Shown piece after piece: positions 12,656 through 40,372 of a DNA stretch of 64,000 bases. Every line of letters starts with the position of its first letter. The stretch's first letter is position 1. Origin of the DNA: Anaeramoeba ignava BMAN (taxonomy: Eukaryota; Protista; Anaeramoebae). Position numbers and translations under genes: made by a program. The stretch covers positions 124,001-188,000 of the forward strand of contig JAPDFW010000136.1 in NCBI GenBank assembly GCA_028826165.1, read 5' to 3'. The notes under the pieces were generated by a model. The model saw only the letters and a list, made by a program, of their open reading frames with translations. It was not told the origin of the DNA and did no database searches.

Positions 12656-12849
12656 AAATTCTTTATTCTTCTTTTAAAAAAAAAAGAAAATTGTTTCGTC
12701 AAGTTTTATTCAATTATTTTTATTTTTAATCAATTAATTTTAATCATTTTTAATTTTCTTTTTTTATTTTTTTCATTTTTTTCTTTTAAATTTAACAACT
12801 CATCATAAAAAAGCAAAAAAAAAGCAACAAAAAAAAAGAAAAAAAAAAA

Positions 12850-16805: not shown

Positions 16806-17274
16806 AAAATTAATTAATAATAAGAAAATCAAACTTTTTTTTTTTAATTTTTTTTTTCAAAATTTAATTCAATTTTAATTTACTTTTAATCAAATTAATT
16901 TCTTTAAAATAATAAATAAGAAACAAATTTAATTTTAAATAATTTAATTTTAATTTAAAATATTTATTAAAAATTTAATTAATAAAAAATAATCCAAAAA
17001 AAAAAATAATAAATTTTAAAAAATTGAATATTTTTAATATAATAAATAAAAATAAAAATTGAAAATAGAAATTAATAATAATTAAATTTAAATTCATTAA
17101 TTAAAATATTAAAATAAAAATCAAATAAAATTTATTATTAATTAATATTTAAATATTAATAAATTATAATCAAAATCAAAAAATAGAATAATTAGTAAAT
17201 TATTTTTTTAGAAAGTTTATCTTATTCAATCATGTTAAATTCAATTTATTTAAAATTTTTTAATTTTTTAATTT

Positions 17275-17605
17275 TATTTTTTAATATATTTTATTATAAT
17301 TAAAATTGGAATAATAAATAAATAAAAATATTAAGTTAATAAATAATAACATTATATTAAATTAAAATAGAATAAATTTAAATTAAATTATTATTAAATA
17401 TTATTAAAATTAAATACTTATCTTTATTAAAATATTTATTCCACTTTTTAATATATTTTATTATAATTAAAATTGAAATAATAAATAATCAAAAATATTA
17501 ATATAATAAATAAAAATATTATATCAAATTAAAATAAAATAAATTTAAATTAAATTATTATTAAATATTATTAAAATTAAATATATATCTTTATTAAAAT
17601 ATTTC
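17275..17605. repeat. 167-bp tandem doublet, intergenic
   Basis: Anchors attg(g/a)a at 17305 and 17472; tctttattaaaatattt at 17421 and 17588. Confidence 0.85.
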
Positions 17606-17617
17606 AATTTTCTTTTC

Positions 17618-18482
17618 AATTTTATTAAATTATTGAGAATAATTTTATATTATTTTAAATAAAGAAATATTAATAAAATATATAAAATATAATTAATTTC
17701 AAATTTAATTATTTAATATTCTTAATTCCATTTTTGAAATAAATTAATAAAAATATTTTATTAATTTTATTTAATTATTGGGAATAATTTTATATTATTT
17801 TTAAATAAAGAAATATTAATAAAATATATAAAATATAATTAATTTTGAAATTTAGTTATTTAATATTCTTTATTCCATTTTTGAAATAAAATTAATTAAA
17901 ATATTTTATTAATTTTATTAAATTATTGGGAATTATTTTATATTATTTTTAAATAAAGAAATATTAATAAATATATAAAATATAATTAATTTGAAATTTA
18001 GTTATTTAATATTCTTTATTCCATTTTTGAAATAAATTAATTAAAATATTTTATTTATTTTATTAAATTATTGGGAATTATTTTATATTATTTTAAATAA
18101 AAGAAATATTAATAAATATATAAAATATAATTAATTTGAAATTTAGTTATTTAATATTCTTTTATTCCATTTTTGAAATAAATTAATTAAAATATTTTAT
18201 TAATTTTATTAAATTATTGGGAATTATTTTTATATTATTTTAAATAAAGAAATATTAATAAAAATATATAAAATAGAATTAATTTCAAATTTAATTATTT
18301 AATATTCCTTATTTCATTTTTGAAATAAATTAATTAAAACATTTTATTAATTTTATTAAATTATTTAGAATAAGTTTATATTATTTTAAATAAAGAAATA
18401 TTAATAAAATATATAAAATATAATTAATTTCAAATTTAATTATTTAATATTCTTAATTCCATTTTTGAAATAAATTAATTAA
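17618..18482. repeat. Intergenic tandem array, about 146-bp unit x6
   Basis: g(g/a)gaat-type anchor at 17635, 17780, 17928, 18073, 18219, 18366 (steps 145-148). Confidence 0.93.
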
Positions 18483-18809
18483 AAAGATTTTATAATTGAA
18501 AGAAAAGAAAAACAATATAAATTTCCTAAATTAATATTAATAATGAGAAGTGAATTATATCGAGGAATGTTTTTATCTGTAAATGAATATACTTCTAATA
18601 AAGTTACAGATTATAGTGAATTAAGTGATAAATCATTTCAAATATTTGAATATTGGATTTATTCAAATCAAATTAAAGAAGAAATTGAAATTACACAAAA
18701 AATAATTGAAGAAATTAAAACTGGAATTGATTATTTTCAATTAAATCAAACAAATCCAAATTTATTTGATTTAATAATTAACAAAATTAAAATTAAAATT
18801 AAAATTTAA
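18481..18809 (+). pseudogene. 5'-truncated duplicate of the RCC1-BTB gene (last BTB domain only)
   Basis: Sequence from 18481 matches 10391 onward (aaaaagattttataattgaaagaaaagaaaaacaatat...). It directly abuts the 146-bp array and has no upstream coding sequence. Confidence 0.85.
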
Positions 18810-18892
18810 ATTAAAATTAAAATAAAAATCATTTTTCATTTTACATTTTTAATTTTTTTAATTTTTTAATTTAAAAACAAAAGAAAAGAAGA

Positions 18893-21068
18893 ATGCAAAT
18901 AATAATAATAACAATAATAATAATTACACTATTATTTGGAGAAGTATTAAACCAATGTTTTATATATAGCGATTGTACGAGTTGTTTAGAAAACGAATGT
19001 TCACTATGGTGTGAGTATACATTTGGAGTTGGGATATGTATTGAAGGAGAAGGGAGTTGTTATGGAAGAGAAGTAAACTACGTAGAAGAATGTCACAATG
19101 AAACGAATTGCGGTTCATATGATTGCTATTCGTGTATTAACGCTGATGAAAGTGAGAGATGCAATTGGTGTGATTGGTCTTCAGGTTTTGGATTGTGTTT
19201 TGATTCCGCTCAAAATGCTAATTATTATCTTTGTCCTTATGAAAATGTTATCGATCCAAATCTTCAGTCTTTTGATTGCTCTTATGGTTGCTCTTCTAAT
19301 TCTGCTTGTAGTGAATGCCAAGCAGATACTTCTTGTAGTTGGTGTGATTTGGATGGAATTGCTTCTTGTGTTGCTAAAGAATCTTGTGTCTCTCCTCTTT
19401 CTTGTCTTGGTTGTATGTTTTTTATTTATTAATTTATTTATTAATTTATTTATAAATTTATTTACAAATTTATTTACAAATTTATTTACTAATTTATTTA
19501 TTAATTTATTTACAAATTTATTTACAAATTTATTTATTAATTTATTTATTAATTTATTTATTAATTTATTTATTAATTTATTTATTAATTTATTTATTAA
19601 TTTATTTATTAATTTATTTATTAAATTTATTTATAAATTTATTTATTAATTTATTTACAAATTTATTTATTAATTTTATTTATTAAATTATTTATTAAAT
19701 TATTTATTAATTTATTTATTAATTTATTTACAAATTTATTTATTAATTTTATTTATTAAATTATTTATTAAATTTATTTATAAATTAATTTCAAAATCGG
19801 ATAAAAATTTATTTATTAATTTATTTATCAATTTATTTATTAATTTATTTTAATTTATTTATTAATTTATTTATTAATTTATTTATTAATTTATTTATCA
19901 ATTTTATTTATAAATTTATTTTTATTAATTTATTTATTAATTTATTTATTAATTTTATTTTTATTAAATTATTTTTATTAAATTTATTTATAATTTATTT
20001 ATTAATTTATTTACAAATTTATTTTACAAATTTATTTACAAATCGGATAAAAATTTATTTATTAATTTATTTATTAATTTATTTATTAATATATTTACAA
20101 ATTTATTTATTAATTTATTTATAAATTTATTTACAAATTTATTTATTAATTTATTTATAAATTTATTTATTAATTTATTTATTAATTTATTTACTAAATT
20201 TATTTACAAATTTATTTCAAAATCGGATAAAAATTTATTTATTAATTTATTTATTAATTTATTTACAAATTTATTTATTAATTTATTTACAAATTTATTT
20301 ATAAATTTATTTATTAATTTATTTACAAAATTTATTTATTAATTTATTTATTAATTTATTTCAAAATCGGATAAAAATTTATTTATTAATTTATTTATTA
20401 ATTTATTTATTAATTTATTTACAAATCGGATAAAAATTTATTTACAAAATTATTTATTAATTTATTTATTAATATATTTACAAATTTATTTATTAATTTA
20501 TTTATTAATATATTTACAAATTTATTTATTAATTTATTTACAAATTTATTTACAAATTTATTTACAAATTTATTTATTAATTTATTTATTAATTTATTTA
20601 TTAATTAATTTCAAAATCGGATAAAAATTTATTAAAAAATTAAAAGGCGCTTCAATTTCAGGATGTGGAAATTGTTTATTGGAAAATTGCTTCTATTTCC
20701 AAAACATAACACCAAGTTGGATTGATGGAGAAATCGCATATAACGGAATCTGTCAATCATCAACACAAAATCCACCATCAGGAACAATTCTCATCAACAA
20801 CACAGAAGAATGCCAAGAATTCATTGACGAATGTTCACCTGAAGAAACATGCACAGGTTGTTTAAATACTGAAAATTGTGGTTGGTGTTTGGATTCTGAA
20901 GAAAGCCCTATTGAAAACGGTCGATGTAAACATGCTTTGGAAATTATTAATAAAGAAGATATTTGTCCTTATCTTCGTGTGTCTTGTTTTGATGGATCTT
21001 TCGCTTCATTTCTTTCTCTCAGTTTATTCACCTTTTGTTTTTCTCTTTCCGTTTTATTTTTCTTTTGA
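18893..21068 (+). CDS. Cys-rich PSI-like surface protein, paralog 3 (near-identical duplicate of paralog 2)
   Basis: Exon 1 18893-19412, intron 19413-20646, exon 2 20647-21068. Confidence 0.85.
19423..20610 (+). repeat. Intronic 12-bp repeat aatttattt(att/aca)
   Basis: Fills intron 19413-20646. Confidence 0.95.
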
Positions 21069-21311
21069 AAATTCTTTATTCTTCTTTTAAAAAAAAAAGA
21101 AAATTGTTTCGTCAAGTTTTATTCAATTATTTTTATTTTTAATCATTTTTAATTTTAATCATTTTTAATTTTAATTTTTTTATTTAAAAAAAGAAGAAAA
21201 AAAAATTTTTTTCAAATTTTCATTTTTTCATTTTTTTCATTTTTTTCTTTTAAATTTAACAACTCATCATAAAAAAGCAAAAAAAAAACAACAAAAAAAA
21301 AGAAAAAAAAA

Positions 21312-23147
21312 ATGGAAAACGATAAAGAAGAAAAAAAAACAAAATCTCAAGCAGAACCAAGTCTTCCAGAAGAGGAAAGAAAAGTTGGAAACACCGAAAC
21401 AACTGAAAAAAGCAAACCCAAAGCGGATAGAAACGAAGATCAAGAAAAAATTGAGTTTGAAGCTGATTTACTTGACAAAGCATTTAAACCGATAAAAAAA
21501 GCAAATGTGATTCTTTTTGACAATCAATTAACAATTCAATTTGAAGATGAAAAACACACGTCAAATTTTGAAGAAGTTAAAATAGCTATCAATCCAAAAA
21601 AACCGACAGCTTTACGTTTATCAATTGAAAACGAAGTTTATTTCTTGAGTTTCTCAAAAGAATCTCAAGTGATTGCAATACGTGAAAGATTACAAGTCTC
21701 ACAAACACCAAAAGAAATGGAAAATCCAGAAATTGAAGAACATAACGGAAACAAAAATGACAGTTTTTTTTCCAGTGAATCTGCAGCTAAAAAATATCCA
21801 GTAACTGTTTTTAATGAGACAACAAATGACACTGAAAAAGGCGAGGCAGTTCTTAGTAAACTTGCTTTCCAACTCAAATTTGGCGAGACAATTTTTCCCA
21901 ATTTAATGAAAAATAACGTCAGTTTTAAGCCGGAAAACGATCCAAAAAAAATTCGACTTTTTTTCACTGAGCAAAAAAAAGGATTTTGCAGCATCAAAAA
22001 AAAAAACGATCTTGTCCTCGAATTTTTAAGCGAACATGCTTGTTCTGATTTCCAGGAAACCTTCCGCAACCGCAATTTTGAGAGAGAATACTCGTTTACT
22101 GTTGATCTTCTCAATGAAAAATATGAAAAGATTTCGCAAGCAAAATTGGTTCTTTTATCGCGAGTTATCAAAATTGTTATCGATGATACAACAACGCAAA
22201 CGTCAATTGTTTCTGTCAAAGCCACTTCTAAAGGAAGAATTATTCGCCTTCAAATTTCCGATTCCAAAATTTATTATTTTTCTTTTTCTGATGCAAAATC
22301 CCAAAATCAATTTTTTCGCCTTTTTAAAGATGCCTATCAGGCATTGAAGTTAAAGCAAAAAGAAGCAGATAAAATTTCAACGGAATCCAAATTTTACGCT
22401 CAAATGGTCAACAAATCAAAGCAAAACCTCGGAAAAGTTGACATCTCTTTGAGTTCTCTTCATTTCTTAATCAATTCGGAAAATCAAAATGATCCGCCAG
22501 AAAACTTGTTCAAAAAAAATTTAACTGTCAAAGAGCATCCAAATGACAAAACAATTTTGATAGTTCTTACTGCAAAACAAAAGAAAAACATTTGGGATTG
22601 TTCAACTTCACTGTCAACTTATATTAAATTTGAAACGGAAGAAATTCGTGATAATTTCAAATTCAAACTCACAAAATGTTTGGAAGAGTTTGAAAAAAGA
22701 GAAAAACTTCTTGGCGAAACAAAACAAGAGCAAACGACAATTCAAGAGCAAAAATACGAAACACCAAAAACAAATGACACAAACCAAGAGCAAAAACAAG
22801 ATGAGCAAAAACATGATGATCAAAAACATGATGATCAAAAACATGATGAGCAAATTAAAGTTTTTCAAGTTGATCTAATGGATCAAAACACGACAATGAT
22901 TGAAAAAACTCAACTTGAAATTCATGAAGACGAATTAATTGTTAAAACAAGTTATTCTTCTTATTCTTCAAAAAAAACTCCAATTATTGGTTTCAAAATT
23001 CATCCAACTCATGATGATTTATTAATGATCCAATTTTCCGGCACAAGTCGATTCATTTATAAATTTTCAGATCCTTCTTTAAGAGCAGAATTTATTGAAC
23101 TTTATAAATCAAAATTTTCGGAAGATATTGAGAAAAAAAACAATTAA
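21312..23147 (+). CDS. PH-like repeat protein, copy B (611 aa)
   Basis: Near-identical to 12850-14997 but lacks the 104-aa internal duplication. Confidence 0.75.
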   Translation: MENDKEEKKTKSQAEPSLPEEERKVGNTETTEKSKPKADRNEDQEKIEFEADLLDKAFKPIKKANVILFDNQLTIQFEDEKHTSNFEEVKIAINPKKPTALRLSIENEVYFLSFSKESQVIAIRERLQVSQTPKEMENPEIEEHNGNKNDSFFSSESAAKKYPVTVFNETTNDTEKGEAVLSKLAFQLKFGETIFPNLMKNNVSFKPENDPKKIRLFFTEQKKGFCSIKKKNDLVLEFLSEHACSDFQETFRNRNFEREYSFTVDLLNEKYEKISQAKLVLLSRVIKIVIDDTTTQTSIVSVKATSKGRIIRLQISDSKIYYFSFSDAKSQNQFFRLFKDAYQALKLKQKEADKISTESKFYAQMVNKSKQNLGKVDISLSSLHFLINSENQNDPPENLFKKNLTVKEHPNDKTILIVLTAKQKKNIWDCSTSLSTYIKFETEEIRDNFKFKLTKCLEEFEKREKLLGETKQEQTTIQEQKYETPKTNDTNQEQKQDEQKHDDQKHDDQKHDEQIKVFQVDLMDQNTTMIEKTQLEIHEDELIVKTSYSSYSSKKTPIIGFKIHPTHDDLLMIQFSGTSRFIYKFSDPSLRAEFIELYKSKFSEDIEKKNN

Positions 23148-23535
23148 TTTTTTCTTTCTTTTTTTTTTCCTTTTCTTCATCTTTAATTTTTTTTTTCTTT
23201 CTTTTTCAAATAACAACAACAAAACAACAATAAAAAAAAAAATTAAACAAAAAAAAATTAGTAATTTTTTTATTTGTGACGTTTTTCATATTTTATTTTA
23301 TTTTAAAAGAAAACAAAAAGAAAAAATTATTTAAAATCAATCAAAAAAAAAGTTTTTTTTTTCATTTTTCATTTTTCATTTTTTTATTTCCTTTTTTTTT
23401 TTATAAAACTTTTTACTTCTTATTCTTTTTTTTTTTTTGCTTTTTACTCTTTGACTTTTTCTCTGTTAATTCCTTTTAATTTCTTAAAAACCAAAAAAAA
23501 AAATTTATATTAAAAAACAAAAAAAAAAATTTTCA

Positions 23536-26500
23536 ATGGGAAATTGTGCTAAAAATTCTGATTCAAAAAAAACACAAAGTATTGATGATCAACTTGCAAA
23601 AGAAACAATTGTTAAAGAAAACCAATTAAAATTATTACTTCTTGGTAAAAAAAACTAAAACCATTTCGAAATGAGAAAAAAAATAACGTTTTTTTTCTCA
23701 TTTTTTTTTTCTTAATTTTTATTTTTATTTTAATTATAATTTCTATTTTGGATTATTAGGTTCTGGTGATTCTGGAAAGTCTACAATTTTAAGACAAATC
23801 CAAATTTCTCATGTTCATGATTTTACTGACCAAGAAAGAAGAGAATTTCAACAACCTATTTATCTTACAATTCTTGAAGGAATTCAAGCAATTATTAATG
23901 CTGCAGATCTTTTAAATATTCCTTTAAATCAAGAACTTCAGGTTAATAAATTAATAAATAAATTAATAAATAAATTAATAAATAAATTAATAAATAAATT
24001 AATAAATAAATTAAATAATTTAATAAATAAATAAATAAATAATTTGATAAATAAATTAATAAATAAATTAATAAATAAATTAATAAATAAATTAATAAAT
24101 AAATTAATAAATAAATTAATAAATAATTTAATAAATAATTTAATAAATAAATTAATAAATAATTTAATAAATAAATTAATAAATAATTTAATAAATAATT
24201 TAATAAATAATTTAATAAATAATTTAATAAATAAATTAATAAATAATTTAATAAATAATTTAATAAATAATTTAATAAATAAATTAATAAATAATTTAAT
24301 AAATAATTTAATAAATAATTTAATAAATAAATTAATAAATAAATTAATAAATAATTTAATAAATAAATTAATAAATAAATTAATAAATAATTTAATAAAT
24401 AATTTAATAAATAATTTAATAAATAAATTAATAAATAAATTAATAAATAATTTAATAAATAATTTAATAAATAAATTAATAAATAAATTAATAAATAATT
24501 TAATAAATAAATTAATAAATAATTTAATAAATAAATTAATAAATAAATTAATAAATAAATTAATAAATAAATTAATAAATAATTTAATAAATAATTTAAT
24601 AAATAAATTAATAAATAATTTAATAAATAAATTAATAAATAAATTAATAAATAATTTAATAAATAAATTAATAAATAATTTGATAAATAAATTAATAAAT
24701 AAATTAATAAATAAATTAATAAATAAATTAATAAATAAATTAATAAATAATTAATAAATAATTTAATAAATAATTTAATAAATAAATTAATAAATAAATT
24801 AATAAATTAATTAATAAATAATTTAATAAATAAATTAATAAATAAATTTATAAATAAATTAATAAATAAATTAATAAATAAAATAAATTAATAAATAAAT
24901 TAATAAATAAATAAATAAATTAATAAATAATTAAATAATTTAATAAATAAATTAATAAATAAATTAATAAATAATTTAATAAATAATTTAATAAATAAAT
25001 TAATAAATAAATTAATAAATTAATAAATAAATTAATAAATAAATTAATAAATAATTTAATAAATAATTTAATAAATAAATTAATAAATAAATTAATAAAT
25101 AAATTAATAAATAAATTAATAAATAAATTAATAAATAAATTAATAAATAAATTAATAAATAAATTAATAAATAAATTAATAAATAAATTAATAAATAAAT
25201 TAATAAATAAATAATAATTTAATAAATAAATTAATAAATAATTTAATAAATAAATTAATAAATAATTTGATAAATAAAAATTAATAAATAAATTAATAAA
25301 TAAATTAATAAATAATTTAATAAAAATAAATTAATAAATAAATTAAAAATAAATAAATTAATAAATAATTTGATAAATAATTTAATAAATATATTAATAA
25401 ATATATTAATAAATAATTTAATAAATAAAAAATAAATAAATAAATAAATTAATAAATAAATTAATAAATAATTTGATAAATAAATTAATAAATAAATTAA
25501 TAAATAATTTAATAAATATATTAATAAATATATTAATAAACAAATTAATAAATAAATTAATAAATAAATAAATAAATAATTTGATAAATAATTTAATAAA
25601 TAAATTAATAAATATAATAAATAATTTAATAAATAATTTAATAAATAATTTAATAAATAAATTAATAAATAAATTAATAAATAATTTTAAATAAATTAAT
25701 AAATTAATTTAATAAATAAATTAATAAATAAATTAATAAATAAATTAATAAATAATTTAATAAATAAATTAATAAATAAATTAATAAATAATAAATATAT
25801 TAATAAATAAATAAATAAATTAATAAATAAATTTGTAAATAATTTAATAAATAAATTAATAAATTAATAAATATATTAATAAATAATTTAATAAATAAAT
25901 TAATAAATAATTTAATAATAAATTAATAAATAAATTAATAAATAATTTAATAAATAAATTAATAAATAAAATTAATAAATAAATTTTAAATAAATTAATA
26001 AATAAATTAATAAATAAATTAATAAATAAATTAATAAATAAATTTATAAATAAATTTATAAATAAATAAATAAATTAATAAATAAATTAAATAATTTATT
26101 AAATAAATTAATAAATAAATTAATAAATTAATTAATAAATAAATTAATAAATAATTTAATAAATAAATTAATAAATATATATTAATAAATAAATTAATAA
26201 ACAAATTAATAAACAAATTAATAAATAAATTAATAAATAAATAAATAAATAATTTAATAAATAATTTAATAAATAAATTAATAAATAAATAAATTAAATA
26301 ATTTAATAAATAAATTAATAAATAAATTAATAAATAATTAAATAAATTAATAAATTAATTAATAAATAAATTAATAAATAATTTAATAAATAAATTAATA
26401 AATATATTAATAAATAATTAAATAAATTAATAAATTAATTAATAAATAAATTGTAAATAATTTAATAAATAAATTAATAAATATATTAATAAATAATTTA

Positions 26501-29121
26501 ATAAATAATTTAATAAATAAATTAATAAATAAATTAATAAATTAATAAATAATTTAATAAATAATTTAATAAATAATTTAATAAATAATTTAATAAATAA
26601 ATTAATAAATAAATTAATAAATAATTTAATAAATTAATAAATAAATTAATAAATAAAATAAATAAATTAATAAATAAATTAATAAATAAAATAAATAAAT
26701 TAATAAATAAATTAATAAATTAATAAATAATTTAATAAATAATTTAATAAATAATTTAATAAATAATTTAATAAAAATAAATTAATAAATTAATTAATAA
26801 ATAAATTAATAAATAAATTAATAAATAAATTAATAAATTAATAAATAAATTAATAAATAAATTAATAAATAAATTAATAAATAATTTAATTAATAAATTA
26901 ATAAATAATTTAATAAATAATTTAATTAATAAATTAATAAATAATTTAATAAATAAATTAATAAATAAATTAATAAATAAATAATTTAATAAATAATTTA
27001 ATAAATAATTTAATAAATAAATTAATAAATAATTTAATAAATAATTTAATAAATAATTTAATAAATAAATTTAATAAATAAATTTAATAAATAAATTAAT
27101 AAATGAATTAATAAATAAATAAATAAATAAATAATTTAATAAATAATTTAATAAATAATTTAATAAAATCTAGCCACATATTGAAAAAGTTATGGAAGCA
27201 ACTGATTTATCACCTGATCTTTATCAAGATTTCCAACAATTATGGAATGATGATTCAATTCAACAAATTATTGGAAGAGCAAATGAATTTCAACTTCATG
27301 ATTCAACTCAATAGTAGATAATTTAAAAACTCAAAAAGAAAAAATCAATTCAAATTTAAATTTAAATTTTTTATTTCATTTTGAAGTTATTTTGGAAATT
27401 TAGATAGACTTTTTGCAGATGATTATTTACCTACTAACGAAGATATTTTAAGAGCAAGAATAAGAACAACAGGAATTATTGAATTGAGTTTTGAAATTGA
27501 AGGAACAAAATTTTTGTAAAAATTAATTCAAATTAATTATCAAACAAAACAACAATTAATTTTTTATTTTTTTTTGGATTAAAATTGAAAAGATTATTTG
27601 ATGTTGGAGGACAAAGAAACGAAAGAAAAAAATGGATTCATTGCTTTTCTGTAATTAAAGCAATTCAATTTAATTTAAAAACAATTTAAATCAAAAACAA
27701 TTTAATTCAAAAATAATTTAATTCAAAAATAATTTAATTCAAAAATAATTTAATTCAAAAATAATTTAATTCAAAAATAATTCAAAAACAATTTAATTTA
27801 AAAATAATTTAATTTAAAAATAATTTAATTCAAAAATAATTTAATTCAAAAACAATTTAATTCAAAAACAATTTAATTCAAAAATAATTTAATTCAAAAA
27901 CAATTTAATTTAAAAATAATTTAATTTAAAAATAATTTAATTCAAAAATAATTTAATTCAAAAATAATTTAATTCAAAAATAATTTAAATTTAATTCAAA
28001 AACAATTTAATTCAAAAATAATTTAATTCAAAAATAATTTAATTCAAAAACAATTTAATTTAAAAACAATTTAATTCAAAAATAATTCAAAAACAATTTA
28101 ATTTAAAAATAATTTAATTCAAAAATAATTTAATTCAAAAATAATTTAATTTAAAAATAATTTAATTCAAAAACAATTTAATTTAAAAACAATTTAATTC
28201 AAAAATAATTCAAAAACAATTTAATTCAAAAACAATTTAATTCAAAAACAATTTAATTCAAAAACAATTTAAATCAAAAACAATTTAATTCAAAAATAAT
28301 TTAATTCAAAAATAATTTAATTCAAAAATAATTTAATTCAAAAATAATTTAATTCAAAAACAATTTAATTCAAAAACAATTTAATTTAAAAACAATTTAA
28401 TTCAAAAATAATTCAAAAACAATTTAATTTAAAAATAATTTAATTCAAAAATAATTTAATTCAAAAACAATTTAATTCAAATTTAAAAATATATATTTTA
28501 GAGTGTAAATGCAATTATCTTCTGTGTTTCTTTAAGTGAATATGATCAAACTCTTTTTGAAGATAATCAAAAAAAAAGAATGGAAGAATCTTTAATGCTT
28601 TTTTCAGAAATTTGCAATAGTCGTTGGTTTCAAAAAACCACAATGATTTTATTCTTTAATAAAAAAGATTTATTTCAAAAAAAGATACAAAATAAAGATT
28701 TAAAAGTAGTATTTGATGATTATGAAGGTAAATATTAAATATTAAATATTAAATTATTAAATTATTAAATTATTAAATTAAATTATTAAATTATTAAATT
28801 ATTAAATTAAATATTAAATAATTAAATTAAATTATTAAATTATTAAATTATTAAAATATTAAATTATTAAATTATTAAAATATTAAATTATTAAATATTA
28901 ATTAAATTATTAAATTGTTAAATTATTTTTCTTTCAAAAAAAAAGGTGGTCGCGATTATGAAAATGCAACTAAATTTATAGCAGATAAATTTAAATCATT
29001 AAATGAAACTCATTCAGAAATTTTTAGTTATTTTACTTGTGCAACAGATTCATCAAATTTTTCACAAGTTTTTGTTCAAGTTAAAAACACAATTCTTTCA
29101 GAAATAGCAAAACAAATGTGA
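23536..29121 (+). CDS. Heterotrimeric G-protein alpha subunit, 7 exons
   Basis: Exons 23536-23644, 23760-23941, 27174-27313, 27387-27515, 27593-27650, 28502-28727, 28946-29121. MGNC lipidation start, [54 protein letters not shown]. Confidence 0.97.
23944..27168 (+). repeat. Intronic 12-bp repeat aataaataa(a/t)tt, 3.2 kb
   Basis: Fills G-alpha intron 2; reverse complement of the unit in the Cys-rich gene introns. Confidence 0.95.
27670..28480 (+). repeat. Intronic 16-bp repeat aatt(c/t)aaaaa(t/c)aattt
   Basis: G-alpha intron 5. Confidence 0.9.
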
Positions 29122-29365
29122 TTAATTCAAATTTGTTTAACTTTCTCTTTTCTTTTTTTTTTTCTTTTCTTTTCTAAAAGTTGGATTTTTTAAGAACAAA
29201 AAAAAAACGAAAAAAAAATTTGAGTTTTTTTTTTAAACATTTTTTTTTAATGAATTTGATTTTTCTTTAATTTCTTTTGTTTTCAGAATTTGATTTTTTT
29301 CTTTTTTTTTTGGAATGGAAGAGAATAAAAAAAATTCGTTTTAAAAATTTTTTAATTTTTTTAAT

Positions 29366-29710
29366 TTAATTTTTATTTGAATCTGTTTTTAATTTTTTTG
29401 TTTGTTGTTCTTCTAAAAGTTTTTCAAATTCTTTATCAATTAATTTTTTATTTTCCATTAATTTTTTGAATTGATCTCCATTTAAATTAACTCCTTTTCT
29501 AGTTCTTTTCCATTCATTTCCACTTTTATAAAATTCTCTAATTTCAATTTGAACTTTTCCACGAAATTTAGAAACAACAATTTTTTTATTTCCTCCAAGC
29601 TAATTTTATTTTTAAAATTAAAATTAAAATTAAACTTAAAATTAAAACTAAATTTTTTAAGTTTGTTGTTTTACATCAAAAGTTTCTTCTAAATTAATTC
29701 CAGAACTCAT
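29366..29710 (-). CDS. SUB1: Transcriptional coactivator PC4/Sub1 (ssDNA-binding), 2 exons; absent from the ORF track
   Basis: Exon 1 29710-29675, exon 2 29599-29366: MSSGINLEETFD-LGGNKKIVVSKFRGKVQIEIREFYKSGNEWKRTRKGVNLNGDQF..., matching the PC4 domain pattern. Confidence 0.88.
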
Positions 29711-30004
29711 TTAAATAATAAAAATGAAAATGAAAAAAATGAAAAAAAAATGAAAATTTTTTTTTTTGAAAGTTTAAATATTTTTTGGTTTTTTTTTTTT
29801 AATCAATTATTTTTAATTAAATTTAATTAAATTCCCTTTTTTGGTTTTTTTTTTTTTGAGTTGATGAAATTTTTTGAAAAGAATTCATTTCTTTTTTTTA
29901 GATTTTTGAGAACATTTTTAGTTTTGGAATTTTTAATCCACATTTTTTATTTATTTCCAAATTTAATTTTTCAACAATAGAATTTTATTATTTCTTGCAT
30001 AAAA

Positions 30005-31765
30005 TATTTAATTAAATATATATTCAATAAAATTAGACATTTTATTAATTATTAAAAAGTTATTTATTTATTAAAATATAAAAAGGGAAAAAATTTAATT
30101 TAATTATAATAAAATTAAGAATAGAAATTAATTAATATTTATAATTATTTTTAATTTAAATATAATTCAATAAAATTAGTCATGTTTATTTATTATTAAA
30201 AGTTATTTATTTATTAAAATATAAAAAGGGAAAAAATTTAATTTAATTATAATAAAATTAAGAATAGAAATTAATTAATATTTATAATTATTTTTAATTT
30301 AAATATAATTTAATATTAATATTTATGTTTATTTAGTTATTAAAAAGTTATTTATTTATTGAAATATAAAAAGAGAAAAAATTTAATTTAATTATAATAA
30401 AATTAAGAATAGAAATGAATTAATATTTATAATTATTTTTAATTTAAATATAATTTAATATTAATATTTATGTTTATTTAATTATTAAAAATTATTTATT
30501 TATTAAAATATGAAAAGAGAAAAATTTAATTTAAAAATAATAAAATTAAGAATAGAAATGAATTAATATTTATAATTATTTTTAATTTAAATATAATTTA
30601 ATATTGATATTTATGTTTATTAATTATTAAAAATTATTTATTTATTGAAATATAAAAGAGAAAATATTTAATTTAATTATAATAAAATTAAGAATAGAAA
30701 TTAATTAATATTTATAATTATTTTTAATTTAAATATAATTTAATATTATTTATGTTTATTTATTATTAAAAAGTTATTTATTTATTAAAATATAAAAAGG
30801 AAAATATTTAATTTAATTATAACAAAATTAAGAATAGAAATGAATTAATATTTATAATTATTTTTAATTTAAATATAATTTAATATTAATATTTATGTTT
30901 ATTTATTATTAAAAATTATTTATTTATTGAAATATAAAAGGAAAAATTTAATTTAAAAATAATAAAATTAAGAATAGAAATTAATTAATATTTATAATTA
31001 TTTTTAATTTAAATAGATATTTAATATTAATATTTATGTTTATTTATTATTAAAAATTATTTATTTATTAAAATATAAAAAGGGAAAATATTTAATTTAA
31101 AAATAATAAAATTAAGAATAGAAATTAATTAATATTTATAATTATTTTTAATTTAAATATAATTTAATATTAATATTTATGTTTATTTAATTATTAAAAA
31201 GTTATTTATTTATTAAAATATAAAAGGGAAAAATTTAATTTAAAAATAATAAAATTAAAAATAGAAATTAATTAATATTTATAATTATTTTTAATTTAAA
31301 TAGATATTTTAATATTAATATTTATGTTTATTTAATTATTAAAAGTTATTTATTTATTAAAATATGAAAAGGGAAAAAATTTAATTTAAAAATAATAAAA
31401 TTAAGAATAGGAATTAATTAATATTTATAATTATTTTTAATTTAAATATAATTTAACATTAATATTTATGTTTATTAATTATTAAAAGTTATTTATTTAT
31501 TGAAATATAAAAAGAGAAAAAATTTAATTTAAAAATAACAAAATTAAGAATAGAAATTAATTAATATTTATAATTATTTTTAATTTAAATAGATATTTAA
31601 TATTAATATTTATGTCTATTAATTATTAAAAATTATTTATTTATTAAAATATAAAAAGAGAAAAAATTTAATTTAAAAATAACAAAATTAAGAATAGAAT
31701 TTAATTAATATTTATAATTATTTTTAATTTAAATAGATATTTAATAAAATTGGACATTTTATTTT
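30005..31765. repeat. Intergenic tandem array, about 143-bp unit x12
   Basis: aagaatag anchor at 30117, 30260, 30405, 30548, 30690, 30830, 30970, 31114, 31257, 31403, 31546, 31690. Confidence 0.95.
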
Positions 31766-31933
31766 ATTTTAAAAAATTTTTTTTTGTAATTAAAAAGAAA
31801 AAAAAAGAATAAAACTGTCCAATTATTTTTTTCATTTTTACTTTTTGTTTTTCTTTTATTTTTTGAATTGATTTTTTTTTGAACTTTCCAAAAACTATTT
31901 TAAAACAAAACAAAAAAACAAAACAAGAATTAA

Positions 31934-34900
31934 ATGGCAATTAATTTGAAAGATCTTTTTTTAAGTTTAGAAGGAACAAAAATAAGAAAGACAGTCATCA
32001 AAACAGGAGAAGTTCGTTATTGTCAACATGTTCCTAATAATTACAGTCGTTCTTTTCATGGAAGTGCAGTTGTTTGTAAACCACCATTTGATCCAGTTTC
32101 GATTGAATTTTGGTACAAAAATTGGAGAATTGGTTCGTTTTTTTCTTTCATTTTTTTTTATTATTTTAAATTTACAATTAATTTTCCTTTTTCCTTTTTA
32201 ATTTTTAATTTTTACTTTTTTTCTTCTTTTTTTTTTAAATTTATTTTAGCTTCTGTTCCTTGTAATTTCCATGCAAAAATTACTGAAAATGTAAGTTAAA
32301 TATCATTTTATTTTTCTTCTTTTTATTTTTCTTTTTAAAATCTAAAAATATCCAAAAAAAAAATAGACTATTGATTTTATTCGATTAAATGGAACTTTAA
32401 AAAAAGAAGGAGGAAGAAGAAAAAATGTCAAGAAAAGATGGTTTGTTTTAAATGATTATAAACTTTCTTATTTTCAAGATGAAAAAGTAATTTTAAAAAC
32501 CAAAAATAAATCAATCAATAAATAAATCAATAAATCAATAAATAAATCAATAAATAAATCAATAAATCAATAAATAAATAAATCAATAAATAAATCAATA
32601 AATCAATAAATCAATAAATAAATCAAATCAATAAATAAATCAATCAATAAATCAATAAATCAATCAATAAATCAATAAATAAATCAATAAATAAATAAAT
32701 CAATAAATAAATCAATAAATAAAATAAATAAATCAATAAATAAATAAATAAATAAAAATAAAATAATCCAAAATAAATAAATCAATAAATAAATCAATAA
32801 ATAAATCAATAAATAAATCAATCAATAAATAAATAAATCAATAAATAAATAAATCAATCAATAAATAAATCAATCAATAAATAAATCAATAAATAAATCA
32901 ATCAATAAATCAATAAATCAATAAATAAATAAATCAATAAATCAATAAATAAAAATAAATCATCAATAAATAAATAAATCAAATCAATAAATCAAAAATC
33001 AATAAATAAATAAATAAATCAATAAATCAATAAATAAATCAATAAATCAATAAATAAATCAATCAATAAATAAATCAATAAATAAATCAATCAATAAATC
33101 AATAAATCAATAAATAAATCAATAAATAAATCAATAAATCAATTAATCAATCAAAACAAAAGCATGCAACAAATCCAATTCGAGAAATTTTAGTTTCAGA
33201 CATTAAAAATTGTGCAAATACTGCAGATTTAATGAAAATTCAAGTGTTTACACCTTCAAGAACTTTTGTTGTGACAGCTGAAGATCCTAAAACAAGTTTT
33301 ATTTGGCTTAAAATGATAACAGCAACCCAAAAACTTCATGAAATGGTTCAAACCAATATGAATATTGTTGAGGTATTTAATTTGAATATTTTATATTTAA
33401 TTTTAATATTTTATTTGAATATTTATTATTTAATTTGAATATTTATTATTTAATTTGAATATTTTATATTTAATTTGAATATTTTATATTTATTTTGAAT
33501 ATTTATTATTTAATTTGATTATTTATTATTTAATTTGAATATTTTATATTTAATTTTAATATTTAATTCGATTATTTATTATTTAATTTGAATATTTGAT
33601 ATTTATTATTTTATATTTAATTTGAATATTTATTATTTAATTTGAATATTTTATTATTTAATTTGAATATTTTATATTTAATATTTAATTTGGATATTTA
33701 ATATTTATTTAATTTGAATATTTAATATTATTTAATTTGAATATTTATTATTTAATTTGAATATTTTTATATTTAATTTGAATATTTAATTTGAATATTT
33801 AATTTGGATATTTATTATTTTATTTATTAATATTTTAAATTTGATTATTTATTATTTAATTTGAATATTTTATATTTAATATTAATATTTATTATTTAAT
33901 TTGAATATTTAATTTGAATATTTAATTTTAATATTTTATATTTAATTTGAATATTTAATTTGAATATTTATTTGAATATTTTATATTTAATCTAAAATTT
34001 AGAAAGCACTCGCTGAACCAGAAAATTTAACAAGATATCTTCATTCAGATAACTACTTTATCTTCCAATACTTGGAAGATAAAAGCTTTTTCCAATACTT
34101 CATTGGCAAAAATAACAACATTGTTTTAGATTTAATCCAAAATGAATTATTATCACCAACTGATTTTGAACAAATTGGAGATTACCAAAAAGAAGCAAGA
34201 GAATGGGATCCAGAATTATGTATTGCGTTGATGAATCTAGCACAAAAAAAATCACAAGAATTGCCTATCAATTTGGTCCGATTTTGGAAAACAAAAATTG
34301 AAGAATCAGATCTTTTTAGTATCAATTTACCTCAATTCATTGTCAAAGATGATCGCCTTATGATTGAGAAACTCAAGGAACTTGAACAGCTGAAAACAGA
34401 TAAAGAAAAAACACAGCTCATTAACCAAGAACTTGTTGGCAAAATTCGCACCTATGAAACAAAGATACAAAAAAAACAAAAGAAAATTACCGAAATTGAA
34501 ATTCAAAACCAACAAAGACAAAATCTCAGCTCAACCGAAAATAACGAGTTGCAAGGAATCAGTAAGGAAGATCAGTTGAATACAATCAAAATCCAAATCG
34601 AAGAAATCGAGGAAGAAAACAAGAAATCAAAAGAAGAAAAAAATCAATTGAATCAAGAAATCAAGGAAAAAAACCAGAAAATAAACAAATTGGAAAGTGA
34701 TATTTCAAAGTTGAAAAAGGAATTGAGCCAAAAAAAGTCAGAGTCTGAACAAATACAAAAGAATCTCAACGAAAAAAACCTGAATAGCACAAGTATAATT
34801 CATGAAGCGAATTTTTTTGATTCCAAAATATCAAGTCTTGAAACCGAATTGAAAAGTGTGGAAAAAACAATTTCCAAGGAGAAAAAAGAACAACTTGAGA

Positions 34901-36417
34901 AGAAAAAAAGCCAAATCACAAGCACAACCCTGCAAAACACGGAAACACTTCGACTGGTTGAAGAAAATAAGAAATTACTTGATGAATTGGATCAACTTCA
35001 ATCAAAAGTTTTGGAAATGTATTCTTCTTTCATGCAGAAAAACACAACTTCCCAGCGCAAAACAAGTTCTATCAGCGAAGAGAAAAGACTTCCCACGCAG
35101 TATCTTTTCCCCAGAAACACCAAGTTCTCAAAAGCAATGCTTTCGTTTGAAAATGCACTTGATATTATCCAAAAACAAATCCAGAAAATGAAACAAAAAG
35201 CACAGACAATTAAGTCACACAAAATGATGCGAATAATAGAGAATTTATCCAAAATCACAAAGCGGAATCAAATCGACAAAAAAGAGGACGAGATTCTCAA
35301 GCACGATTTTGTGTCTGAAGTTCTGGAATATCTCAAACAAGTGAATGATTTCGCGACCCAAACTCGAATGTTTTCCTCCAACTTATGGAATCAGGAAACA
35401 AGAAAAAACATCGATCGGAGTTTGGAAGAGATTTTGGCGCCACTCAACGAGATACTTTCCCTGTCTAGATTGTACGTATCTTCCCTCACAAAGGATACAA
35501 TCCCAGATGACTCCAAAAACCCAAAAATCAAAAACAATTTTGATCAGATCTTTTCTTTGTGTCAAAAAATCATTTCCAAAATCAAAGAATCAAGAGAAAC
35601 TGAGAAAGTCCAAGAGGAGTCAAAAGACATTGCGGTTCAAGAACTTGTCACCGCTGAAAAATCACTTACTAAGGCATCACATAAAATATCAGAATTCAAA
35701 GTGAAAGCTGAACAACTTTCAAAAATTAAATTAGGAAATTATTTTGGAGAAGATTTACTTGATTTGGCAAATCTACTAATTGAGCACACTTCGGCTCTTG
35801 TTTCCGATGCAAGAAGCACACAAATAAAAGTGTCTGAGACCGCGAATCAGAATTCACGACGCTCACAAGAATCAGAAAAACAGACAAAAGAAGCACTAAT
35901 CAAAGGTGCTCGATCAATCACTCAATCAACAAATTTATTTCTCGAAATTTTGAAAACGGCTGTCAACGAAAAAAAATCCTCAAACAAGACACGTGCACGA
36001 ATAATCTCAGGGGCAAAAGAGGTATCTGCAGCTGCAACCCAATTGAGTATTGCTGCTAATGTTTTTCTTCCTTTTGGATCAAATGAAGCTGCGATTTTGG
36101 AATCTGATGCTAAAAAAGTCAGAAATACTACAAATGAATTGACTAAGTTTGCTGAGAATTTGGATCACAACGAAATTTTTCAATCAAATATTATTATTCC
36201 AACTTTCCAAAATCCAAATTTAGTTAAAAATGGAAAAACTCCTGATAATTTGCAAAAAAGTGAAGCTTCTAATGTTTTTGCTCGTGTTGAAGCTCAAACT
36301 AGAGTTAATGAGATTGAAAAGAAGCTACAAGCAGCAAGAGCTAATTTATTTGCTATTAGGAAAAAGAAATATGCGAAAATGCATACAACTCAAGTTAAAA
36401 CGAATCGATATTATTAA
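31934..36417 (+). CDS. PH domain + long coiled coil + C-terminal I/LWEQ (THATCH) actin-binding protein (Hip1R/Sla2/talin-like C-terminus), 5 exons
   Basis: Exons 31934-32132, 32250-32290, 32367-32486, 33163-33372, 34003-36417. PH: GTLKKEGGRRKNVKKRWFVL...RTFVVTAED....IWLK. I/LWEQ: IISGAKEVSAAATQL...EAQTRVNEIEKKLQAARANLFAIRKKKY. Confidence 0.85.
32505..33155 (+). repeat. Intronic aat(a/c)-type repeat
   Basis: Intron 32487-33162. Confidence 0.9.
33375..33990 (+). repeat. Intronic ~20-bp repeat ttaatttgaatattt(t)atat
   Basis: Intron 33373-34002. Confidence 0.85.
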
Positions 36418-36421
36418 ATAA

Positions 36422-37595
36422 AAAAATCAAAATCAAAATCAAAATTAAAATTAAAATAAAAATAAAATCAAAATCAAAATCAAAATCAAAATCAAAATTA
36501 AAATTAAAATCAAAATCAAAATCAAAATCAAAATCAAAATCAAAATCAAAATTAAAAATCAAAATCAAAATCAAAATCAAAATTAAAATTAAAATAAAAA
36601 TCAAAATCAAAATCGAAATCAAAATCAAAATTAAAATCAAAAATCAAAATCAAAATCAAAATCAAAATCAAAATTAAAAATCAAAATCAAAATCAAAATC
36701 AAAATCAAATTAAAATCAAAAATCAAAATCAAAATTAAAATCAAAATCAAAATCAAAATCAAAATCAAAATCAAAATCAAAATCAAAATCAAAATCAAAA
36801 TCAAATTAAAATAAAAAATCTAAATCAAAATCAAAATCAAAATCAAAATAAAAATCAAAATCAAAATCAAAATGAAAATTAAAATTAGAATTAAAATCAA
36901 AATCAAAATCAAAATAAAAATCAAAATCAAAATCAAATAAAAAATCAAAATCAAAATCAAAATCAAAATAAAAATAAAAATCAAAATCAATTTAAAATCA
37001 AAATCAAAATTAAAATTAAAATTAAAATCAAAATCAAAATAAAAATCAAAATTCAAATCAAAATTAAAATTAAAATCAAAATTAAAATCAAAATAAAAAT
37101 CAAAATAAAAATCAAAATCAAAATAAAAATCAAAATCAAAATAAAAATCAAAATCAAAATCGAAATCAAAATCAAAATTAAAATTAAAATTCAAAATAAA
37201 AATCTAAATCAAATTAATTCAAATCAAAATAAAAATCAAAATTAAAATAAATTTAAAAATCAAAATCAAAATCAAAATTAAAATCAAAATCAAAATCAAA
37301 ATCAAAATCAAAATTAAAATCAAAATCAAAATCAAAATCAAATAAAAAATCAAAATCAAAATCAAAATCAAAATAAAAATCAAAATTAAAATCAAAATCA
37401 AAATCAAAATAAAAATAATCAAAATCAAAATCAAATTAAAATTAAAATTAAATTTCATTCAAAATCAAAATCAAAATGAAAATTAAAATCAAAATTAAAA
37501 TCAAAATAATAAAAATCTAAATCAAAATCAATTTAAAAATAAAAATCAAAATCAAAATAAAAATCAAAATTAAAATCAAAATCAAAATTAAATAA
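36422..37595. repeat. (aaaatc/aaaatt)n hexamer tract between convergent genes
   Basis: Lies between the I/LWEQ gene stop and the eIF5A 3' end. Confidence 0.95.
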
Positions 37596-37831
37596 AAAAG
37601 TTAAAATTTGAAAGTGTTTTTGTTCTTTGAATTCCTTTTTGAATGATTTTTTCCTTTTTTTCTTTTTTGGAATTCTAAAGTTTTAAATTCTTGCTTTATA
37701 AAGAAATGAAGAAAGAATGAAAAAAAAAGAAGAAGAGAAAAAAAAAGAAGAAAGAAGAGAGGAAAAAAAGAAGAAAAGCAAGAAAAGAAAAGAAATTGAA
37801 TGAAAGGTAAAAAAAAATTAAACAACAATCC

Positions 37832-39060
37832 TCATTTATCTTCCTTAAAATCTGTAATTTGTTCTTCACCCATTGAGCTTGTAACAACAGCAAGCAATTC
37901 TTTACCTTCATCAATAGCTGCTTTGATTTTTTCTCCAAGTTCATTAGCTGGAAGTTTTAAATCTTCCTTTGTTTCACCAGCATCAGAAATAAGAGAAATA
38001 AATCCATCATCATTGATAGAAAGAAGCTAATTATATAATAAAATTATTTTAATATAAAATTATTTTAATATAAAATTATTTTAATATAAAATTATTTTAA
38101 TATAAAATTATTTTAATATAAAATTATTTTAATAATCAAATTATTTTAATAATATAAAATTATTTTAATAATCAAATTATTTTAATAATATAAAATTATT
38201 TTAATAATCAAATTATTTTAATAATCAATTATTTTAATAATATCAAATTATTTTAATAATATAAAATTATTTTAATAATAAATTATTTTAATAATATCAA
38301 ATTATTTTAATAATAAATTATTTTAATAATAAATTATTTTAATAATATAAAATTATTTTAATAATATCAAATTATTTTAATAATATAAAATTATTTTAAT
38401 AATCAAATTATTTTAATAATAAAATTATTTTAATAATAAAATTATTTTAATAATCAATTATTTTAATAATATAAAATTATTTTAATATCAAATAATTATT
38501 TTAATAATATAAAATTATTTTAATAATATAAAATTATTTTAATAATATCAAATTATTTTAATAATCAAATTATTTTAATAATCAAATTATTTTAATATTA
38601 AATAATTATTTTAATAATATCAAATTATTTTAATATCAAATTATTTTAATAATATTTACTGCATATTCGTTTCTGTTAACGTATGGTTCTTCTAAATTGT
38701 GAGTTGAAGAAATTGCTTCTTCAATTTTGTTTCCAGTAAAAATGTCAATTCCTGTAAAAGTAACTTTTGCATGACCATGCTATAATTAATTTATAAATGA
38801 ATTTTAATTTTAATTTTAATATTAATTTTAATTTTAATTTTAATTTTAATTTTAATTTTAATTTTAATTTTAATTTTAATTTTAATTTTAATTTTAATTT
38901 TAATTTTAATTTTAATTTTAATTTTAATTTTAATATTTGAAAACGTTACTTTTCCTGTTTTGTGAGTACTCATTCCAACAATTTTGCATGGTCTTCCTTT
39001 TAAAACAATAAATCCTCCTTTACGGAATGCTGATGCTTGTTTTGGAATTGATAAAGACAT
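37832..39060 (-). CDS. EIF5A: Translation factor eIF5A, 3 exons, 141 aa
   Basis: Exons 39060-38950, 38779-38660, 38026-37832. RKGGFIVLKGRPCKIV..STHKTGK|HGHAKV..TGIDIFTG...STHN...EDLKLP...SMGEEQI. Confidence 0.97.
38035..38655 (-). repeat. Intronic 16-21-bp repeat containing aaattattttaata
   Basis: eIF5A intron 2. Confidence 0.9.
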
Positions 39061-39240
39061 TTTTTTTTCTATTTAAATTTAAATATAATTTTAAATATAA
39101 ATTTATATTTTGTTTTTGTATTTAAAAAAATTTTTTTTTTACTTTAATTTTAATAAAAAAATAGTTTTTTTTTAAATTGAAAAATGAAAAATAAAAAATA
39201 AATAAAAAAATTTTTTTTGTTTATTTTTTATTTATTTTTT

Positions 39241-39270
39241 TGAGTGACGTATTTAGTTTTGCCCATTTGA
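39241..39270 (-). promoter_or_regulatory. GC-containing island upstream of eIF5A (GTGACGT, GCCCA)
   Basis: tgagtgacgtatttagttttgcccatttga lies about 185 bp upstream of the eIF5A ATG in otherwise almost pure A/T DNA. Confidence 0.4.
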
Positions 39271-39397
39271 ATAAAAAAAGTTTTAATAAAATTTTCTTAT
39301 TGAAAAAAATTTCATGATCACATCATCCAAAATTTTTTAATTAAAAATAAATAAAAAAAAATAAAAAACAATTCAAATAAAATTTTTTCTTTTTTTT

Positions 39398-40372
39398 TAA
39401 TAAGTTTAATTTAATATTTAATTTATAAATTAATTTAAAAATATAATTTAGTATTTAATTTTATTATTAAAATAATAATTTAATGTTTTAGATTTAAATA
39501 TTTTATTATTTAAATATTTAACATATAAATATAAAAAATAAGAATAGATTTAATTTAATATTTAATTTATAAATTAATTTGAAAATATAATTTAATATTT
39601 AATTCTATGTTTAAAATAATAATTTAATGTTTTAGATTTAAATATTTTATTATTAAAATATTTAGCATAAAAATATAAAAATAAGAATAGGTTTAATTTA
39701 ATATTTAATTTATAAATTAATTTAAAAATATAATTTATTATTTAATTTTATTTTTAAAATAATAATTTATTGTTTTAGATTTAAATATTTTATTATTTAA
39801 ATATTAAACATAAAAATATAAAAAAATAAGAATAAGTTTAATTTAATATTTAATTTATAAATCAATTTAAAAATATAATTTAATATTTAATTCTATTATT
39901 AAAATAATAATTTAATGTTTTTAAATTTAAATATTTTATTATTTAAATATTTAGCATAAAAATATAAAAAATGAGAATAGATTTAATTTAATATTTAATT
40001 TATAAATTAATTTAAAAATATAATTTAATATTTAATTTATGTTTAAAATAATAATTTATTTTTTTAGATTTAAATATTTTATTATTTAAATATTTAACAA
40101 ATAAAATATAAAAATAAGAATAGATTTAATTTAATATCCAATTTATAAATTAATTTAAAAATATAATTTAATATTTAATTCTATGTTTAAAATAATAATT
40201 TATTGTTTTAGATTTAAATATTTTATTATTTAAATATTTAACATATAAATATAAAAAATGAGAATAGATTTAATTTAATATTTAATTTATAAATTAATTT
40301 AAAAATATAATTTAATATTTAATTTTATGTTTAAAATAATAATTTATTGTTTTAAATTTAAATATTTTATTA
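39398..40372. repeat. Intergenic tandem array, about 144-bp unit x6.7
   Basis: (a/g)agaata(g) anchor at 39540, 39683, 39828, 39973, 40116, 40260. Confidence 0.93.

What the first reader, a model, noticed from the sequence alone, without database searches (positions are those of the whole stretch)
17275..40372. Three separate intergenic tandem arrays all have nucleosome-sized periods (146, 143, 144 bp), plus a 167-bp doublet
Seen: the three long complex intergenic spacers (17618-18482, 30005-31765, 39398-40372) are arrays of very AT-rich units with measured periods of 145-148, 140-146 and 143-145 bp, and a 167-bp doublet abuts the first. Intronic repeats have 4-21-bp units, so this is a distinct class. 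Copies differ by substitutions, so they are not simple read duplicates. Known: the nucleosome core wraps about 147 bp and the chromatosome about 167 bp. Inference: a dispersed genome-wide system of nucleosome-quantised spacer arrays. These could be insulators, replication origins or dispersed centromere-like units, or could arise by nucleosome-unit slippage or unequal exchange. This is my best candidate for an undescribed system in the window.
Basis: partly seen in the sequence, partly recalled or inferred. Interest (0 to 1): 0.85.

Follow-up and report, generated by a model that had tools for sequence, protein, structure and literature searches.

The report
Satellite-bordered mobile gene cassette
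In the amoeba Anaeramoeba ignava, short A/T-rich repeats of about 144 bases share one small motif, and several of them border a gene cassette that has been copied, apparently by recombination, to about 60 places in the genome; a nucleosome role is untested.

Summary
The arrays are real (periods 145-147, 140-146, 143-145, plus 167 x2), but they are not three independent inventions. The genome is Anaeramoeba ignava. The units share a G-containing motif, about one per unit, and some families align beyond it (A2 with A3). The 167-bp doublet and the 145-bp array are the right border of a cassette: 144-bp array, BTB-TLDc gene, conserved 3' flank, 167-bp array, 145-bp array, then a cut-off piece of an RCC1-BTB gene. 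Its right junction occurs exactly 59 times on 35 contigs. The 144-bp family has about 1,360 units, some outside the cassette. Outer ends are ragged, with no terminal inverted repeats, target duplication or transposase. Direct repeats and three permuted junctions point to spread by recombination (gene conversion, template switching or circles). The TLDc cargo is hypervariable. A nucleosome role is unproven: no 10-bp signal, histone H1 present, and the motif also occurs in 12-58-bp arrays. Dispersed 140-180-bp satellites are known from oyster and beetle. This scan already noted the array class and single cassettes on other DNA. No unbiased period histogram or read check was possible.

The parts
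17278..17604 (-). A167: 167-bp doublet; inner right-border array of the cassette (1-3 copies at other loci, mean 168 bp); shared motif on the minus strand
17618..18497 (-). A1: 145-bp array x6; outer right border of the cassette; at least 40 loci at 94-97% identity; motif on the minus strand
18495..18800 (+). 5'-truncated last BTB domain of an RCC1-BTB gene, joined to A1 through about 20 bp of microhomology; this junction occurs exactly 59 times genome-wide
16810..17277 (+). Conserved 470-bp non-coding 3' flank of the BTB-TLDc gene; most conserved part of the cassette (1.4% mean divergence; its first 300 bp at least 40 loci at 98-100%)
15255..16805 (+). BTB-TLDc cargo gene (split into two ORFs here, frameshift or assembly error); family of about 100 A. 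ignava paralogs; TLDc hypervariable
15088..15134 (-). Single inverted copy of the 47-bp A3 motif core in the cassette promoter (91% complementary to A3 at locus L011); the cassette's left junction in this window falls at its edge. Coordinates approximate.
10405..15091 (+). Left copy of a 4.7-kb host duplication (RCC1-BTB 3' end, Cys-rich gene, 715-aa gene) flanking the cassette
18495..23235 (+). Right copy of the same duplication (0.4-3% divergent in coding parts, 4% in the BTB piece)
8930..10707 (+). Resident RCC1-BTB gene whose 3' end is repeated after A1
30041..31746 (+). A2: 143-bp array x11.9, single-locus family, homologous to A3 over about 105 bp; between divergent PC4/Sub1 and a + strand gene
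39405..40372 (+). A3: 144-bp array x6.7; a solo copy (not in the cassette) of the family that forms the cassette's left border elsewhere; about 1,360 units genome-wide; between divergent eIF5A and ankyrin-BTB genes

Best explanation
The arrays belong to one superfamily of short, dispersed, 93-98% A+T satellite-like arrays that carry a purine-rich motif (roughly AAAA, T or G, two purines, AATA, purine, A), about once per unit. SHOWN: A3, A167 and A1 bracket a 3.5-4.7-kb cassette (A3, promoter, BTB-TLDc gene, conserved flank, A167, A1, BTB piece) present at about 60 loci, with the motif pointing inward from both sides; A3 also occurs alone; A2 is a single-locus relative. INFERRED: the cassette encodes no mobility protein and spreads by host recombination. 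A break in or near a repeated sequence (the BTB piece of any RCC1-BTB gene, an A3 array, or short A/T microhomology) is repaired by copying a cassette-bearing paralog, or by integrating a circle excised between the direct repeats. This leaves direct repeats, ragged array ends and sometimes long flanking duplications, as in this window. The conserved borders act as homology arms around a hypervariable TLDc cargo. INFERRED, weaker (about 0.4): the 144-bp length was inherited from a common ancestral unit and is held by selection on the spacing of a protein-binding site in promoter-side chromatin. It need not mean one positioned nucleosome per unit.
For: A complete or partial cassette order recurs at most of the 20 fetched loci. 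A1-to-BTB junction 59 exact matches on 35 contigs, control 0. BTB-to-A3 junction 24 matches, of which 14 lie 3.5-4.7 kb upstream of an A1-BTB junction and 3 follow one directly (A1-BTB-A3, the permuted order). Left and right BTB pieces of one locus are no closer than pieces of different loci (4.4 vs 4.6%), so they are not fresh target duplications. RCC1-BTB genes next to A3 are as far from each other (4.2%) as from other paralogs (3.9%), while their cassettes differ by 1-2%, which fits independent entry into resident genes. A3 units are as alike between arrays as within (94.5 vs 94.6%). Outer A3 ends start at varied phases. Relatedness of units: A2-A3 z 7.5, reversed A1 to the L012 array z 9.1, reversed A167 to A2 z 6.5. 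A shuffled unit carries the strict motif with p 0.005-0.04. Cargo: mismatch to a reference copy 0.2-1.5% in the flank against 8-18% in the coiled-coil/TLDc half, pN/pS 1.2 in C-terminal TLDc. PMC10710043 suggests that homology-directed conversion and NHEJ may be unusually permissive in Anaeramoeba.
Against: The loci were chosen by similarity to the arrays, so the sample is biased, and no empty-site allele or circle was seen. A1 does not align to A2 or A3 beyond the motif (z 0.7), so common ancestry of all families rests on the motif and on chains of pairwise matches in very low-complexity DNA; L007 and L008 were found with an A2 query. The motif pattern was chosen after seeing the units, and its strict form catches only about 0.4-0.6 per unit. 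Nearest-neighbour units fall in the same array more often than chance (18 vs 4.7 of 98), so some local amplification also occurs. RCC1-BTB genes may simply evolve faster than the cassette. Nothing here tests binding or chromatin.
Confidence: 0.62

Rival explanations
1. Replication origins: each array is an A/T island with oriented initiator sites; origins at the cassette borders let it re-replicate or persist as a circle, which drives its spread.
For: Intergenic, 94-96% A+T, oriented motif plus an inverted single copy next to A3; three per 64 kb here; ORC2 encoded; permuted A1-BTB-A3 junctions. From own knowledge: fission-yeast origins are A/T islands and yeast Y' elements move as origin-bearing circles.
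Against: No replication data; none in 62 kb of A. flamelloides; motif also in short-period repeats.
Confidence: 0.17
2. Neutral passengers: one ancestral 144-bp unit, possibly a higher-order repeat of 12- or 36-bp subunits, was amplified and carried about by recombination; its length is historical and has no chromatin meaning.
For: Shared ancestry; weak 12- and 37-bp sub-periods in A3; copy number varies from 2 to 20; the genome is full of other repeats; absent from the A. flamelloides sample.
Against: Units of one family at about 4% divergence already differ in length with SD 2.3 bp, yet five families at 26-35% divergence keep means within 142.7-146; the motif survives where the rest is unalignable; the inverted 47-bp core is kept in the promoter.
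Confidence: 0.3
3. One reading: nucleosome-quantised spacers, one positioned nucleosome per unit, acting as insulators, or units generated by nucleosome-sized slippage or circularised mononucleosomal DNA.
For: Sharp 143-146 mode; other periods seen (154, 168, 178, 188) step by roughly 10-12 bp; nucleosome-scale monomers are common in satellites (PMC4675708).
Against: 143-145 bp leaves no linker for a 147-bp core; H1 present; no 10-bp AA/TT signal (p 0.12-0.99); de novo generation at each locus would not give a shared motif; very few periods sampled.
Confidence: 0.2
4. Dispersed centromere units (repeat-based holocentromere like Tyba), a CENH3 nucleosome of about 120-130 bp plus short linker per unit.
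For: Dispersed through gene-rich DNA, sharp monomer length, mobile; Tyba has a sharp 172-bp peak and is carried by Helitrons (10.64898/2026.01.17.700053).
Against: Arrays are 0.3-3 kb against about 20 kb for Tyba; they sit in promoters and around a cargo gene; several divergent families; chromosome type unknown.
Confidence: 0.06
5. Non-autonomous transposon (Helentron HINE or Foldback type) with satellite-built termini.
For: Arrays at both ends with inward-pointing motifs; oyster HINEs carry 138-181-bp arrays (PMC7492417); DDE transposases exist in the genome.
Against: No fixed outer ends; A3 and reversed A1 do not align (z -0.7); no locus-specific duplication; no stable hairpin in the flank (z +3.2); no Helitron_like_N match, though the control was silent.
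Confidence: 0.07

Closest known systems
Short dispersed satellite-like arrays of Crassostrea gigas (PMC7492417) and Tribolium castaneum (PMC4675708)
   Same: Short euchromatic arrays, monomers of 140-180 bp, few copies per array, many families, spread as part of larger mobile units.
   Different: Here 93-98% A+T with a shared motif, mode at 144 rather than about 170, arrays form the outer borders of a gene cassette and no HINE modules were found.
Trypanosoma brucei VSG cassettes with 70-bp repeats (PMC4858185)
   Same: Works like: a conserved tandem repeat beside a variable gene provides homology for duplicative gene conversion among dispersed copies.
   Different: Free-living protist, intracellular BTB adaptor cargo, arrays on both sides, no known expression site or switching; not homologous.
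Duplication through circular intermediates or MMBIR template switching (PMC7450558)
   Same: Permuted order of blocks, microhomology junctions, no transposase.
   Different: Here a recurrent 4-kb unit at about 60 loci rather than single events; circles not shown.
Tyba holocentromere arrays of Rhynchospora (10.64898/2026.01.17.700053)
   Same: Dispersed arrays with a sharp monomer length among genes.
   Different: Tyba arrays are about 20 kb, one family, CENH3-bound, Helitron-associated.

Membership tests
Dispersed short satellite-like arrays | Head-to-tail monomers of about 140-180 bp in short arrays at many euchromatic loci | tested here: met
Helentron HINE | Fixed left and right modules with subterminal inverted repeats outside the array | tested here: not met
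   Outer flanks differ between loci and ends vary in phase
Helentron HINE | 3' palindrome or stem-loop | tested here: inconclusive
   First 290 bp of the conserved flank fold worse than shuffles; other segments not folded
Helentron HINE | Autonomous Rep-helicase partner in the genome | tested here: inconclusive
   No PF14214 match, control genomes also silent
Foldback / TIR DNA transposon | Long terminal inverted repeats | tested here: not met
   A3 vs reversed A1 z -0.7 and 0.7; only the short motif is inverted
Foldback / TIR DNA transposon | Target-site duplication at fixed ends | tested here: not met
   Ragged ends; flanking BTB repeats not locus-specific
LTR or DIRS retroelement | Reverse transcriptase, integrase or recombinase in the unit; near-identical terminal repeats | tested here: not met
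   Cargo is BTB and TLDc only; repeats 2-8% apart within a locus
Nucleosome-positioning satellite | About 10-bp AA/TT periodicity | tested here: not met
   p 0.12-0.99 for seven of eight units; only the 188-bp unit p 0.017
Nucleosome-positioning satellite | Phased nucleosomes on the units | not testable with these tools
   Needs MNase-seq
Repeat-based holocentromere | CENH3 co-localisation | not testable with these tools
   No ChIP data
Repeat-based holocentromere | Arrays of about 20 kb of one family | tested here: not met
   0.3-3.1 kb, several families
Replication origin | Initiation activity, ORC/MCM loading | not testable with these tools
   ORC2 is encoded; activity untested

The most novel reading that the evidence does not exclude
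The motif-bearing 144-bp arrays are sequence-defined replication origins or chromatin anchors of A. ignava, and they turn the BTB-TLDc cassette into a self-replicating circular gene shuttle that integrates by homology, expanding and diversifying a ubiquitin-ligase adaptor repertoire without any transposase.
Probability: 0.12. Interest if true: 0.85.

Novelty: new variant of a known kind. Interest (0 to 1): 0.5.

Why it matters
It links an undescribed satellite class (the genome paper PMC11550330 has no mention of 'satellite' or 'BTB') to the way a large gene family spreads in an early-diverging anaerobic eukaryote: by recombination between conserved borders around a variable domain, without a transposase. 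If the motif is a bound site at fixed spacing, the genome offers a natural series of periods (12-188 bp) to test why satellite monomers favour nucleosome-scale lengths, and candidates for origins or centromere units in a lineage where neither is known.

Tried and rejected
Unbiased genome-wide period histogram: not done. Motif-pair counts at 130-160 bp (1,167) and 90-120 bp (732; controls 28 and 26) are both swamped by short-period arrays and do not give a period spectrum. The cassette gene region is held by five runs of the organism in two studies, which says nothing about array copy number. Rejected: read-duplication artefact (copies differ 5-8% and recur on dozens of contigs); target-site duplication; TIR or Foldback element; hairpin in the flank; 10-bp periodicity. 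A remembered parallel with 144-145-bp repeats of the Entamoeba rDNA circle could not be verified and is not used. A. flamelloides (62 kb at Rac loci) showed no such arrays; a small sample.

Full report
Source. A protein from a fetched locus matches Anaeramoeba ignava M0811_11231 at 100% on a contig of the same length. The window is C126:124001-188000 of a 42.8-Mb, 147-contig assembly. The genome paper does not mention satellites.

Observation. All four arrays are present with the stated periods: A167 17278-17604, A1 17618-18497, A2 30041-31746, A3 39405-40372. Scores are 577-2841 against a threshold of 50. Other long non-coding arrays in the window have 4-23-bp units. A2 and A3 lie between divergent genes.

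Distribution. A2 is single-locus; its other matches are about 70%. A1 and A3 each match at least 40 loci at 94-97% (capped at 40). A 32-base A3 pattern has 723 exact hits; with a hit rate of 0.53 per unit this gives about 1,360 units, 0.46% of the genome.

The arrays are related. With a composition-aware score against dinucleotide shuffles, A2-A3 gives z 7.5, reversed A1 with a bystander array at L012 z 9.1, and reversed A167 with A2 z 6.5. The families examined carry a purine-rich word with a GAATA-like core, about once per unit; a shuffled unit has the strict form with p 0.005-0.04. Anchored on the motif, A1-L012 (z 4.4) and A2-A3 (z 3.2) still align but A1-A2 and A1-A3 do not. So the superfamily is held together by the motif and by chains of matches. 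The pattern was chosen after seeing the units, and the DNA is very low in complexity. The motif also occurs in arrays of about 12, 15, 29, 36, 50 and 58 bp.

The cassette. Twenty 10-kb loci show a recurring order: A3, promoter with one inverted 47-bp copy of the A3 core, BTB-TLDc gene, 470-bp flank, A167 x1-3, A1 x2-7, then the last BTB domain of an RCC1-BTB gene. The A1-BTB junction occurs 59 times on 35 contigs. The same BTB piece often precedes A3 as the end of a full RCC1-BTB gene: 24 such junctions, 14 of them 3.5-4.7 kb upstream of an A1-BTB junction and 3 directly after one. In this window the cassette lacks A3 and sits between two copies of a 4.7-kb host segment, joined at the inverted core by A/T microhomology. 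The window's A3 is a solo copy.

How it moves. There is no mobility gene in the unit, outer ends are ragged, the borders are not inverted repeats, and left and right BTB pieces are not locus-specific (4.4 vs 4.6%). RCC1-BTB genes next to A3 are no closer to each other than to other paralogs, while their cassettes differ by 1-2%. A3 units are equally alike within and between arrays, with some local amplification. I infer spread by host recombination: conversion or template switching from a cassette-bearing paralog, or integration of a circle. Sequence alone cannot separate these. The flank differs by 0.2-1.5% while the TLDc half differs by 8-18% with pN/pS near or above 1, so conserved arms surround a variable cargo, as 70-bp repeats do for VSG genes (PMC4858185; analogy only).

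The period. Family means are A3 143.8, A1 145.2, A2 142.7, L007 145.3 and L012 about 145-146; others are 154, 168, 178 and 188. Within A3, pairs at 4% divergence differ in length with SD 2.3 bp, so drift over 26-35% divergence should spread the means more than seen. This hints at constraint, but the sample is small and selected, and assembly errors inflate the within-family figure. Against a simple nucleosome code: no 10-bp AA/TT signal, H1 encoded, and no room for a linker in 143-145 bp (established core size 147 bp). ORC2 is encoded, so an origin role is possible. No such arrays were seen in 62 kb of A. flamelloides.

Comparison. Dispersed short arrays of 140-180-bp monomers are known in oyster, carried by HINEs (PMC7492417), and in Tribolium (PMC4675708). 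This case is a member of that broad kind but fails the HINE, Foldback and retroelement tests. It differs in the shared motif, the extreme A+T content and the recombination-type cassette.

Earlier scan notes. The array class was followed up twice on other DNA of this genome (s1-689397, s1-689393), and first readers noted single cassettes (s1-689718, s1-704479, s1-695305) and a shared core motif (s1-704556). I saw the cassette notes after my own analysis. My data contradict the phrase 'mutually unalignable' in s1-689397 for some pairs.

Verdict. Real, undescribed in the papers I could search, a new variant of a known kind. Interest 0.5.

Noticed in passing
window 10405-15091 and 18495-23235: 4.7-kb direct duplication of three host genes or gene ends around the cassette; Cys-rich gene copies 0.4-0.8% apart.
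   Followed up: yes
window 12961-13585: Exact-frame 312-bp internal duplication (99%) in the 715-aa gene, absent from its copy at 21312.
   Followed up: no
L014:4894-7382: A 2.5-kb insert with a 585-aa ORF lacking Pfam matches splits the conserved cassette flank; possibly an unclassified transposon.
   Followed up: partly
L029:7804-9999: Gene with a DDE_Tnp_4 (Harbinger/ISL2EU-type) domain directly abutting the end of an A3 array.
   Followed up: partly
L016:3171-6528: Cassette variant whose cargo is U-box, TPR and TLDc instead of BTB-TLDc, between the same borders.
   Followed up: partly
L019:2668-7080: An 843-aa ORF without a clear Pfam family lies between two direct A3 arrays.
   Followed up: partly
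window 40436-45808: Very long ankyrin-repeat gene ending in BTB domains, broken into several ORFs by frameshifts (real or assembly error), next to the solo A3 array.
   Followed up: partly
RCC1-BTB genes in L012-L028 and window 8930-10707: RCC1 propeller is hypervariable (12% DNA divergence, pN/pS 0.9) while BTB parts are conserved; genes are often flanked by a 6-bp microsatellite on both sides.
   Followed up: partly
G000 C9:87184-88243, C1:832652-833743, C2:241465-242387, C11:37354-39291: Arrays of about 29, 36, 58 and 12 bp that contain the same motif core.
   Followed up: no
window 11331-12162, 19421-20611, 23945-27167: The same 12-bp intron unit fills introns of the duplicated gene and, reversed, a 3.2-kb stretch in the G-alpha gene region.
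   Followed up: no
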